DNA of 64,000 nucleotides from Sminthopsis crassicaudata. Its lineage: Eukaryota. Made by a program: the position numbers and the translations under genes. Under the pieces are notes generated by a model. The model worked only from the letters and a program-made list of their open reading frames with translations, did no database searches and was not told the DNA's origin. Shown here in pieces: positions 8,301 through 11,300 of the stretch. The stretch lies in NCBI RefSeq assembly GCF_048593235.1, contig NC_133619.1:612600558-612664557 (forward strand), given 5' to 3'. Numbering within the stretch: position 1 is the stretch's first letter; each line of letters starts with the position of its first letter.

Positions 8301-11300
8301 GTGTGTGTGTGTGTGTGTGTGTGTGTGTGTACGTGTACTCAATATGGGGACAGAAATATATCTTACCCTGCAGGAAAATAGGACAATGAGATACAGGAAG
8401 AGGGGAAGGTGATTAAAAAATGTAAAATATGCTTTTAAACGTAACTGAAGGAAAACATTAAATAAATAAATCAAATACAGAAAAAAAAAAGAGATTGATT
8501 TTGGGTCTGTGAAGGAAAGAAGGAAACAAGATTTATTAAGTGCCAACTTCATGATAGGTACTATGTTATGTACTACAATATTATATAAGTTCAATCCTAG
8601 GAGGAAGATGCTATTATTATTATTTCCATTTTATACTTGGGAAAAACTGACGTAGATAACATCTCTATGGTTTGCTCAGTGTAACAGCTAGAAAATGTCT
8701 GAGATAGAATTTGAATTCAAATCTTCCTGACTCCAGTCCCAATCAATTTATTTAAATCAATTTACTTACAGTACCACCTAACTGCCTCTAAAAACATACT
8801 GTTAAGATGGATGGGAAAGATCCCTGTTAAGATGGATGGGAGGGATAACTGGGGAAAACTATGAGGATGTAAAAAACAAACAAAAAAAAAAATCAATAAA
8901 ATTTTTTTTAAAGTCAGCTCTTTAGATACAGGGCTTAGCAGAGGATTTTCAGACCTTGCTGAATTGAATCTCAGTCATCTTTTTTCACCTTCTTTCTCCC
9001 CAAGTGAAAATTGCCACCAAGGCCAATCCCTTGAATGGGAAGTCCCTTAGAGCCAGCAGTGTCCGGTCCCAGCTGGAGACCTCCCTGAAGCGGCTGCAGT
9101 GCTCCCAAGTGGACCTGTTCTACCTGCACATGCCAGACCACAACACACCTGTGGAAGAGACACTACGGGCCTGCAATGAGCTGTACCAGGAGGTTAGAGC
9201 AAGAGATGGTGGAGCTGGGAGGGCCCTTAGAACCCTGGATGTCAGAGCTGGAAGGGTCCTTAGAACCCAAGAGGTCAGAGCTGGGAGGGTCCTTAGAACC
9301 CAGGAGGTCAGAGCTGGGAGGGCGCTTAGAACCCAGGAGGTCAGAGCTGGGAGGGCCCTTAGAACCCAGGAGGTCAGAGCTGGGAGGGTCCTTAGAACCC
9401 AGGAGGTCAGAGCTGGGAGGGCCCTTAGAACACAGGAGGTCAGAGCTGGGAGGGCCCTTAGAACCCAGGAGGTCAGAGCTGGGAGGGCCCTTAGAACCCA
9501 GGAGGTCAGAGCTGGGAGGGTCCTTAGAACCCAAGTGGTCAGAGCCGGGAGGGTCCTTAGAACCCAGGAGGTCAGAGCCGGGAGGGCCCTTAGAACCCAG
9601 GAGGTCAGAGCTGGGAGGGCGCTTAGAACCCAGGAGGTCAGAGCTGGGAGGGCCCTTAGAACACAGGATGTCAGAGCTGGGAGGGCCCTTAGAACACAGG
9701 ATGTCAGAGATGGAGAGGCTTGGAGCATCATCAGTCAATCAATTATTCAAGATTATTGATTAACTGCTTACATTGTGCCAGACACTGCTAGACCTGGAAA
9801 TGAAAGAAACAGGCACCCTGATGGTTTTCTAACTAGGGGAGGCAAGAACAAGTAGAAATAGAAGGATGACTCCTGATCAGGGGCCAGCTTGATTTGATGG
9901 TCTGTTTCACTTCCTCACTTCCTCTCTCCCTCACCACTCTCTCTTTCTCTACCTGTCTGTCTGTCTGTCTCACTCTGTCTCTGTTTCTGTCTGTCGCTCC
10001 CCCCCCACACACACACACAGGGTAAGTTTGTAGAACTGGGCCTCTCTAACTATGCTGCCTGGGAAGTAGCTGAGATCTGCACTCTCTGTAAGAACCATGG
10101 CTGGATTCTCCCCACTGTGTACCAGGTAAGACCCTGCCCGAGCCCAGGGTGCTGCCGGAGTTCCCGGGGGTTCTTTTTGGCCAGAGCTCCCCTTCCACTC
10201 CCCCTTGGAGGCCCCAGGGGTGGGGGAGGAAGCCCAGGCCCCAAGGAGGATGTGAGTAGTCCCAGGGCACCTACATGGGGCTCTGACTCCCAGGGCTTTG
10301 TGGTAGGAAGGGCTCTGGCTTAGCAGATACACAAGCCCTAGGTTCAGATCCAGACTCTGCCCCTTCTCTTCTCTGGGTATCAGTTCCCTCACTTGCCAAG
10401 TGGATGCCCAGACCTCCCTTCCGGGTCTAAGCCCCACCTCCAGGCTGCTTTGGGGGGCAGTCCCTGGCCTGGCCCCCCCCAACTGTGCTCTCCCCCCTTC
10501 TCCCAGGGCATGTACAACGCCATCACTAGACAAGTGGAGACGGAGCTGTTCCCCTGCCTACATCACTTTGGATTGCGCTTCTACGCCTATAACCCTTTGG
10601 CTGGTATGAGGAAAATGGGAGAGAGGATGTCGGGGTCTCTGGGGGGGAGTTAAGAGGTCTGGATTCAAATATGGGCTAAGATCTTTGCCCATGGGCAAGT
10701 TTCAACCTCTGAGGCTCTGGGACCAAATAGGGGAAATAATATTTATACTAACTCACAGAATTTTTGTGGGGAAGGCATTTTTTAAAAGATAAAAATCACT
10801 CCCGAAATCTGAATTTATTGTGGTTAACTTGGTCCTACCAAGTCACTCCTGTGAGCTTAACTTGAAGGAGGGAGCAGGATAGTGTCCAAGAATAGTGGGG
10901 GTCCCAGTCTTGGCAATTCAGACATAAGGAAGCTTCTGGGCCACATAGTTAATTAACTTAAAGTGTGATATTACCTATGTTTTATTGTATTTTTATTTAT
11001 TTTGTTAAATATTTCCTAATTATATTTCAATCTAATTGTGCCCCTTGGTAGCAAGTTTGACGCTTTTGCCCTAGAGGAATTATCCTTCTCTTCTTCTTCC
11101 CACCCCATGGCCCAGTTTTAGAATTCTGAACTTACAAACCATGACCATTGTTCCTGGATGGGATGTGTCAACCTGTTCCCCTGCTCTCCCACTCACCTTC
11201 TAGGTTTTGCCACCAGGATGCTCCTTCCAGGCCCTGTTTCATGTGTGGCTTCCCTTGTTAGACAGTAACCCATAGGAGGGAATAATATTCTTCTCTAAAA

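What the first reader, a model, noticed from the sequence alone, without database searches (positions are those of the whole stretch)
9186..9720. Intron-2 minisatellite is a tandem array of in-frame copies of the exon-2 splice donor
Seen: the real junction is CCAGGAG|GTTAGAGC and the repeat unit contains CCCAGGAG|GTCAGAGC. Unit donors such as 9306|9307 lie 114 nt downstream (in frame), with 33-nt periodicity and no stop in that frame. The true donor (GTTAGA) is no better than the decoys (GTCAGA). In copy 2 the in-frame offsets are also +114, +147 and +180, but its real donor is stronger (GTGAGA). Inference: alternative donor use could insert variable numbers of the 11-aa repeat ([11 protein letters not shown]) before GKFVELG, or the array could act as a U1 decoy, making VNTR length a splicing rheostat.
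Basis: partly seen in the sequence, partly recalled or inferred. Interest (0 to 1): 0.72.

Follow-up and report, generated by a model that had tools for sequence, protein, structure and literature searches.

The report
Splice-donor minisatellite in dunnart AKR7A genes
In the fat-tailed dunnart, a 33-base tandem repeat starting exactly at the end of exon 2 of two aflatoxin-aldehyde-reductase (AKR7A) genes repeats that exon's splice signal 11 to 13 times; the repeat is real, is of a kind already known from human genes, and nothing available shows the extra signals in use.

Summary
Intron 2 of both tandem AKR7A paralogs starts with a 33-bp minisatellite (15 and 28 units). Its unit carries GAG|GTCAGAGC; the real junctions are GAG|GTTAGAGC (copy 1) and GAG|GTGAGAGC (copy 2).

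- **Copy 1:** eleven exact pseudo-donors lie at +81, +114 ... +444, all in frame and open. They match the real donor in U1 complementarity.
- **Copy 2:** the real donor is much stronger.
- **Frame:** two of the unit's three frames are open, so "in frame, no stop" is only a mild coincidence.

The functional reading could not be tested.

Indirect evidence leans against appreciable use:
- RefSeq gives one canonical isoform per gene.
- About 300 fetched AKR7 proteins show no insertion at this junction.
- No public protein carries the repeat peptide.
- An insertion would fall in a 3-residue loop of the barrel.

This is a new member of a known kind: human F7, IFI6, CBS, ABCA7, LMNB2 and PDGF, where the first donor dominates. 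This scan already noted the same kind on other dunnart DNA (TMEM199, SLC38A5, NFKBIB, an NLRP gene, NOS3). Interest is low to moderate.

The parts
9005..9192 (+). Exon 2 of AKR7A paralog 1 (188 nt, ends in phase 0 with ...TAC CAG GAG)
   Evidence: Acceptor AG at 9003-9004. tblastn of RefSeq protein P0241 residues 73-135 gives 100% identity over 9004-9192.
9186..9200 (+). Junction 15-mer: 7 exonic plus 8 intronic nt. It is a partial first monomer of the array and holds the real donor GAG|GTTAGAGC (cut 9192|9193).
   Evidence: 14 of 15 identity to the donor-bearing half of the unit consensus. U1 duplex -5.7 kcal/mol; approximate PWM 2.0 bits.
9201..9720 (+). 33-bp minisatellite, about 15 units in exact 33-nt register. 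It has eleven GAG|GTCAGAGC pseudo-donors (last exonic nt 9273, 9306, 9339, 9372, 9405, 9438, 9471, 9504, 9570, 9603, 9636). Weaker variants are GAT|GT at 9240, 9669 and 9702, and GTG|GT at 9537.
   Evidence: TRF 9212-9718. Unit map with 14 of 14 spacings equal to 33. Donor scan with frame check. First unit 9201-9233 is 25 of 33 identical to the consensus.
10021..10125 (+). Exon 3 of paralog 1 (begins GKFVELG)
   Evidence: Six-frame motif look-up, frame translations and tblastn of P0241.
36930..37117 (+). Exon 2 of AKR7A paralog 2, with real donor GAG|GTGAGAGC at 37117|37118
   Evidence: Sequence. tblastn of RefSeq protein P0215 gives 97% over 36920-37117. U1 duplex -9.7 kcal/mol; PWM 5.9 bits.
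37118..38086 (+). Paralogous 33-bp minisatellite, about 28 units with indels (32-, 34-, 36- and 43-nt units, and a G13 run). It has 13 GAG|GTCAGA sites: +46 is out of frame, +81 to +180 are in frame, and later ones are out of frame.
   Evidence: TRF 37135-38070. Unit map. Donor scan. blastn 8985-9718 against 36909-37638 gives 89%.
38362..38466 (+). Exon 3 of paralog 2
52468..55614 (-). Third array of the same 33-bp unit (about 92-96 units, 63 GAG|GTCAGA motifs on the minus strand). It lies in intron 1 of the +-strand gene EMC1, is antisense to that gene, and has no AKR7 exon beside it.
Evidence: TRF. Flanks read. Unit consensus. EMC1 exon 1 peptide at 51746-51841 and exon 2 peptide at 63907-63945 on the + strand.

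Best explanation
This is a splice-junction minisatellite of the F7/IFI6/CBS/ABCA7 type, most likely a selectively near-neutral intronic repeat.

What the sequence shows: a 33-bp unit expanded directly after exon 2 of an AKR7A gene. The unit's donor-bearing half is homologous to the last 7 nt of the exon plus the first 8 nt of the intron.

What is inferred:
- The array reached, or was kept in, both paralogs by the gene conversion that also homogenised introns 2-3 and exons 3, 4 and 6.
- During splicing, the most upstream donor, at the natural exon end, is chosen almost exclusively.
- The downstream copies are competent but silent pseudo-sites.
- At most a few per cent of transcripts use the nearest good copies (+81 and +114 in copy 1).
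For: - **Anatomy:** the array abuts the exon with no unique spacer. The junction 15-mer is 14 of 15 identical to the unit in both paralogs, and the next 33 nt are a degenerate in-register unit.
- **Not chance:** no similar 15-mer occurs elsewhere in the window.
- **Annotation:** RefSeq proteins P0241 and P0215 use the canonical junction, and each gene has a single isoform. No insertion at YQE|GKF appears in about 300 AKR7 proteins, including antechinus and devil.
- **Repeat peptide:** no public protein of 83-262 aa carries it.
- **No frame maintenance in copy 2:** the array has 32-, 34-, 36- and 43-nt units and stops.
- **Nearest pseudo-sites disabled or harmful:** GAT|GT at +48 in copy 1; no GT in the first unit and an out-of-frame +46 site in copy 2.
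- **Protein cost:** the insertion point is a 3-residue loop between helix 122-134 and strand 138-144 of the barrel, so long inserts are unlikely to be favoured.
- **Precedent:** in F7 only the most upstream of identical sites is used, even against stronger downstream ones; LMNB2 and PDGF behave likewise (PMC1557585).
- **Conversion:** exons 3, 4 and 6 are 97-100% identical between the paralogs and introns 2-3 are 85% identical. Exons 1, 2, 5 and 7 follow orthology instead.
Against: - No RNA reads could be examined, so silence of the decoys is inferred, not shown.
- In copy 1 the true donor has a pyrimidine at +3. It equals the decoys in U1 pairing (-5.7 against -5.5 kcal/mol) and in the approximate PWM.
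- Predicted RNA structure does not hide the decoys.
- Each decoy is followed by G-triplets, which from my own knowledge usually favour use of a nearby upstream donor.
- In IFI6, CBS and ABCA7 the proximal pseudo-sites are used to some extent (PMC1557585, PMC5954066).
- Copy 1 has 14 of 14 spacings of exactly 33 nt, against 77-81% in the other two arrays. This may be youth or weak frame selection.
- The third array in EMC1 intron 1 leaves the direction of origin of the unit open.
Confidence: 0.65

Rival explanations
1. Real alternative donor use. In copy 1, whose own donor is no better than the decoys, an appreciable share of transcripts splices from +81, +114 or later units. This would give AKR7A isoforms with an in-frame Arg-rich insert of 27 + 11n residues before GKFVELG. 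Such transcripts would escape nonsense-mediated decay.
For: Eleven identical in-frame open decoys with equal U1 pairing and PWM. They are predicted to be accessible. Copy 1's array has no indel. Precedents exist for use of proximal pseudo-sites in IFI6, CBS and ABCA7.
Against: No such isoform exists in RefSeq for three dasyurids or in 5.8 billion clustered proteins. The insertion would fall in a tight helix-to-strand turn of the barrel. The nearest in-register site is GAT|GT. In F7, identical and even stronger downstream sites stay silent.
Confidence: 0.17
2. The array is a U1-binding platform. Multiple U1 snRNPs bound just downstream reinforce definition of exon 2 and use of its weak donor, like natural exon-specific U1 sites. 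Alternatively they titrate or misplace U1, so that array length tunes splicing efficiency (a rheostat).
For: Copy 1 has 11 and copy 2 has 13 exact U1-complementary sites within 0.45-0.9 kb of the donor. Intronic U1 binding downstream of a natural donor promotes exon inclusion in PAH, and so do engineered exon-specific U1s (PMC5933811). ABCA7 VNTR length correlates with skipping of the next exon (PMC5954066).
Against: Nothing here measures U1 binding or splicing. The F7 study reports finding no autonomous regulating element in the neighbouring intronic sequence (section heading). The same unit sits antisense in EMC1 intron 1, where it cannot act this way. That fits a self-expanding repeat without a dedicated role.
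Confidence: 0.1
3. The unit did not arise from the AKR7 junction. A pre-existing 33-bp minisatellite family (the EMC1 array or another source) was inserted at the start of intron 2, and its likeness to the donor is partly convergent.
For: A 3-kb array of the same unit lies at a non-paralogous site with degenerate old-looking edges. All three arrays share edge variants (GGAT|GT) and interior variants (GGAG|GT). The AKR7 arrays are bracketed by an 8-nt direct repeat, AGAGATGG, at 9202 and 9706. The EMC1 consensus keeps a CpG (CCCGGG) where the AKR7 units have CCCAGG.
Against: The exonic 7 nt are fixed by the conserved Y/H-Q-E codons, yet they match the unit. The match of 14 of 15 sits exactly at the array edge in both paralogs. 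No unit-like single copies occur elsewhere in the window.
Confidence: 0.12

Closest known systems
Human F7 intron 7 37-bp VNTR (Borensztajn et al. 2006, PMC1557585)
   Same: A minisatellite whose first monomer spans the exon-intron boundary, so the donor recurs in every unit. The pseudo-sites are functional when tested. The unit length is similar (37 against 33 bp).
   Different: In F7 the pseudo-sites are strictly identical to the real donor, and the first monomer is complete (4 exonic plus 33 intronic nt). Here they differ at +3 (T or G against C), and the first monomer is a 15-nt partial unit. Use of F7 pseudo-sites would shift the frame (37 nt); here 33-nt steps keep it. F7 splicing is tested by experiment; here it is untested.
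Human IFI6 (6-16) 12-nt minisatellite at the exon 2 donor (Turri et al. 1995, as described in PMC1557585)
   Same: The donor is multiplied by a repeat whose period is a multiple of 3.
   Different: IFI6 has a 12-nt unit and 25 pseudo-sites, and the two most proximal ones are constitutively used. The dunnart unit is 33 nt, its nearest in-register site is weakened, and no use is documented.
Human CBS intron 13 31-bp VNTR and ABCA7 intron 18 25-bp VNTR (PMC1557585, PMC5954066)
   Same: A VNTR that includes the splice donor.
   Different: The ABCA7 unit (25 bp) is out of frame, so use of the extra donor gives a premature stop. The CBS unit is 31 bp, also not a multiple of 3. In the dunnart, copy 1's decoys are all in frame. 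Polymorphism and any effect are unknown.
Other dunnart splice-donor minisatellites noted by this scan (TMEM199, SLC38A5, NFKBIB, an NLRP gene, NOS3)
   Same: Same genome and same architecture: a repeat grown from, or abutting, the donor.
   Different: Here the array is present in two paralogs with different real-donor strength, is in frame, and has a third copy at an unrelated intron. Those notes are unchecked AI notes.

Membership tests
Splice-junction minisatellite (F7 IVS7 / IFI6 / CBS / ABCA7 type) | Tandem array lying in the intron directly against the exon, with no unique spacer | tested here: met
   Array register runs from 9201, preceded only by the junction 15-mer 9186-9200. The same layout holds at 37111-37125 in copy 2.
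Splice-junction minisatellite (F7 IVS7 / IFI6 / CBS / ABCA7 type) | First monomer spans the exon-intron boundary (exonic nucleotides are part of the unit) | tested here: met
   7 exonic plus 8 intronic nt match the unit at 14 of 15 in both paralogs. The first monomer is partial (15 of 33 nt).
Splice-junction minisatellite (F7 IVS7 / IFI6 / CBS / ABCA7 type) | The donor sequence is reiterated in the following units | tested here: met
   11 (copy 1) and 13 (copy 2) GAG|GTCAGA sites. They are identical to the real donors except at +3.
Splice-junction minisatellite (F7 IVS7 / IFI6 / CBS / ABCA7 type) | Only the most upstream donor, or the first few, is used in transcripts | not testable with these tools
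Only indirect support exists, from annotation.
Splice-junction minisatellite (F7 IVS7 / IFI6 / CBS / ABCA7 type) | Length polymorphism between alleles (VNTR) | not testable with these tools
   Only one assembly is available. The paralogs differ (15 against 28 units).
AKR7A (aflatoxin B1 aldehyde reductase) genes | Aldo-keto reductase fold and sequence, with a complete open 7-exon gene | tested here: met
   P0241 and P0215 carry Pfam PF00248 and map to all 7 exons at 94-100%. Matches to PDB 2BP1, 2C91, 2CLP and 1GVE have E-values from 1e-183 to 1e-168. The model has pTM 0.85.

The most novel reading that the evidence does not exclude
In paralog 1 the true donor has decayed to the strength of its eleven in-frame copies. 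A measurable share of transcripts then uses them, producing a ladder of AKR7A enzymes with 27 + 11n-residue Arg-rich loops between helix 4 and strand 5. Unit number, presumably variable between animals, would then set how much normal detoxifying enzyme is made. Paralog 2, with its strong donor, would be the built-in control.
Probability: 0.1. Interest if true: 0.55.

Novelty: new member of a known kind. Interest (0 to 1): 0.3.

Why it matters
If the extra donors were used, this would be a natural case where repeat length changes the protein sequence or dose of a detoxifying enzyme. The two paralogs, one with a weak and one with a strong real donor, would be a ready-made test of how the spliceosome picks among identical sites.

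As it stands it adds one more example, in a marsupial, of a repeat class described in human F7, IFI6, CBS and ABCA7. It also adds to a run of such repeats in this genome. That run hints that 5' splice-site regions are favoured places for minisatellite birth in the dunnart.

Tried and rejected
- **RNA evidence:** Afterwards I sent no DNA letters of that stretch to any outside search tool. I worked from exon 1 by reference, from public protein ids, and from a stretch of the EMC1 array.
- **Repeat peptide:** a search with 150 aa translated from the EMC1 array found nothing at E <= 1e-5. HMMER's composition correction may hide such repeats, so this negative is weak.
- **RNA structure:** I expected the CCCAG...CUGGG hairpin around each decoy to mask it. 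The partition-function calculation instead gives most copy 1 decoys a higher unpaired probability than the true donor. I rejected structure as an explanation.
- **Transposable-element origin of the unit:** with the arrays masked, only chance 10-11-mers match in the window. This is not supported, though a 64-kb window is a small sample.
- **MaxEntScan:** its tables were not available. I used an approximate PWM from recalled frequencies and U1 duplex energies instead.
- **Spliced isoform model:** a joined isoform with the insert was neither searched nor folded. One local translation was used only to read the frame of the +46 site.
- **Turri et al. 1995 (PMC306954):** not held.

Full report
**Where and what**

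The window holds two tandem AKR7A (aflatoxin B1 aldehyde reductase) genes on the + strand. RefSeq proteins of Sminthopsis crassicaudata map to them exon by exon.
- P0241 (332 aa) maps to copy 1 at 5123-16299, at 100% identity on exons 2, 6 and 7.
- P0215 (376 aa) maps to copy 2 at 33237-42679.

The family is secure. Both proteins carry Pfam PF00248, they match PDB 2BP1, 2C91, 2CLP and 1GVE at E-values of 1e-183 to 1e-168, and the predicted model has pTM 0.85.

Exon 2 of copy 1 is 9005-9192 and exon 3 starts at 10021. In copy 2 these are 36930-37117 and 38362.

TRF reports a 33-bp array at 9212-9718 (15.3 copies, 94% matches) and another at 37135-38070 (28 copies).

The real junction of copy 1 is CCAGGAG|GTTAGAGC. 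The unit contains CCAGGAG|GTCAGAGC.

A scan of every GT after the exon gives these results for copy 1:
- Eleven exact GAG|GTCAGAGC sites lie at +81, +114 ... +444.
- All are multiples of three and all are open.
- The inserted unit reads [11 protein letters not shown].

For copy 2 the scan gives:
- The real donor is GAG|GTGAGAGC.
- In-frame open decoys lie at +81, +114, +147 and +180.
- A good decoy at +46 is out of frame and would run into a stop at the start of exon 3.
- From the fifth unit (32 nt) the frame is lost.

The strength claim also holds:

| Site | U1 duplex (kcal/mol) | Approximate PWM (bits) |
|---|---|---|
| Copy 1 real donor | -5.7 | 2.0 |
| Decoys | -5.5 | 2.0 |
| Copy 2 real donor | -9.7 | 5.9 |

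The PWM uses frequencies recalled from memory, so it is only approximate.

**How much is beyond chance**

The array is certainly real. The likeness of unit and junction is not chance:
- The 15-mer 9186-9200 (7 exonic plus 8 intronic nt) matches the unit at 14 of 15 in both paralogs.
- With the arrays masked, no other 15-mer in the window comes within two mismatches on either strand.

The "in frame and open" property is weaker evidence. The unit is open in two of its three frames. The period and the first offset (48 = 15 + 33) each have about a one-in-three chance of being a multiple of three.

Copy 2 shows no maintenance of frame. Copy 1 does have 14 of 14 spacings of exactly 33 nt, against 77-81% in the other arrays. 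This fits a young, homogeneous array as well as it fits weak selection.

**Anatomy and origin**

The layout has three parts:
- The junction 15-mer is a partial monomer.
- A degenerate unit follows, in exact register (9201-9233, 25 of 33 identical).
- About 14 cleaner units come after that.

The exonic part (CCAGGAG) encodes the conserved Y/H-Q-E, so the exon cannot have been copied from the repeat.

Edge units of all arrays carry GGAT|GT and interior units carry GGAG|GT. The nearest in-register pseudo-site of copy 1 (+48) is therefore weak.

The two genes are old paralogs. Both the 332-aa and the roughly 370-aa types occur in Dromiciops. Yet the pattern is mosaic:
- Exons 3, 4 and 6 are 97-100% identical between the dunnart copies.
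- Introns 2-3 align at 85%.
- Exons 1, 2, 5 and 7 follow orthology.

Gene conversion therefore explains why both copies carry the array.

A third array of the same unit lies at 52468-55614 on the minus strand. It has about 92-96 units and sits in intron 1 of EMC1. The EMC1 exon 1 peptide is at 51746-51841 and the exon 2 peptide at 63907-63945, both on the + strand. This array is antisense to that gene and has no AKR7 exon beside it. Whether it was seeded from the AKR7 array or the reverse cannot be decided without other genomes.

**Is it used?**

This could not be tested directly. After the decline I sent no DNA of 8985-10650 to outside search tools.

Indirect evidence:
- RefSeq lists one canonical isoform for each dunnart gene and for the antechinus and devil orthologues.
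- None of about 300 fetched AKR7 proteins has an insertion between YQE and GKF.
- A search of 5.8 billion clustered proteins with 150 aa of the repeat peptide, taken from the EMC1 array, found nothing.
- The junction falls at residues 135|136, in a three-residue turn between helix 122-134 and strand 138-144 of the barrel. An insert of 27 to 148 residues there is unlikely to be harmless.

Evidence that keeps the decoys plausible:
- Predicted RNA structure does not hide them.
- Each is followed by G-triplets. From my own knowledge these usually favour use of a nearby upstream donor.

By sequence alone, therefore, the decoys look competent.

**Comparison with what is known**

Minisatellites whose first monomer spans an exon-intron boundary are described in several human genes (PMC1557585):
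- F7: 37 bp; only the first of five to nine identical sites is used, even against stronger downstream ones.
- IFI6: the first two pseudo-sites are used constitutively.
- CBS: two pseudo-sites are used.
- LMNB2 and PDGF: only the real site is used.

In ABCA7 a 25-bp VNTR includes the exon 18 donor. The second unit's donor is used in about 2% of transcripts, and VNTR length correlates with skipping of exon 19 (PMC5954066). U1 binding just downstream of a natural donor can also help that donor (PMC5933811).

This scan has also noted the same architecture on other dunnart DNA: TMEM199, SLC38A5, NFKBIB, an NLRP gene and NOS3 (unchecked notes).

**Verdict**

This is a real, well-described splice-junction minisatellite and a new member of a known kind.

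The most likely behaviour is that the upstream donor does nearly all the work and the copies are silent or used at a few per cent (confidence about 0.65).

The special points are:
- the in-frame, indel-free array behind a weak real donor in copy 1;
- the strong-donor paralog as an internal control;
- the third array in EMC1.

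Noticed in passing
window 52468-55614 (minus-strand unit), within EMC1 intron 1 (exon 1 peptide 51746-51841, exon 2 peptide 63907-63945, + strand): A 3.1-kb array of the same 33-bp unit starts about 0.6 kb after EMC1 exon 1. In the EMC1 sense each unit reads pyrimidine-rich ...CCCTCCCAG|C, so there are about 90 acceptor-like motifs early in that intron. The EMC1 identification rests on my recollection of the human N-terminus and on note s1-153424.
   Followed up: partly
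window 8985-10733 against 36909-39073, and 12653-13291 against 39640-40273: There is mosaic gene conversion between the two AKR7A paralogs. Exons 3, 4 and 6 are 97-100% identical in protein and introns 2-3 are 85-89% identical in DNA. Exons 1, 2, 5 and 7 are closer to orthologues in other marsupials.
   Followed up: partly
window 9202-9209 and 9706-9713; copy 2 at 37128 and 38067: The AKR7 arrays are bracketed by a short direct repeat: AGAGATGG in copy 1, and GGGATGG / AGAGATGG in copy 2. This could be the slippage site at which the array was born, or it could resemble a target-site duplication.
   Followed up: no
window 37829-37842: A run of about 13 G sits inside unit 21 of the copy 2 array and makes that unit 43 nt long. 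It may be a homopolymer expansion or an assembly uncertainty.
   Followed up: no
window about 44400-47000, minus strand: Open frames there resemble MRTO4 (by recollection only). The resulting order AKR7A, AKR7A, MRTO4 (-), EMC1 (+) matches the order I recall for human 1p36.13.
   Followed up: no
window 9227-9720: Copy 1's array has 14 of 14 unit spacings of exactly 33 nt. In the copy 2 and EMC1 arrays, 77-81% of spacings are 33 nt. This may reflect youth of the array or mild selection on frame.
   Followed up: partly
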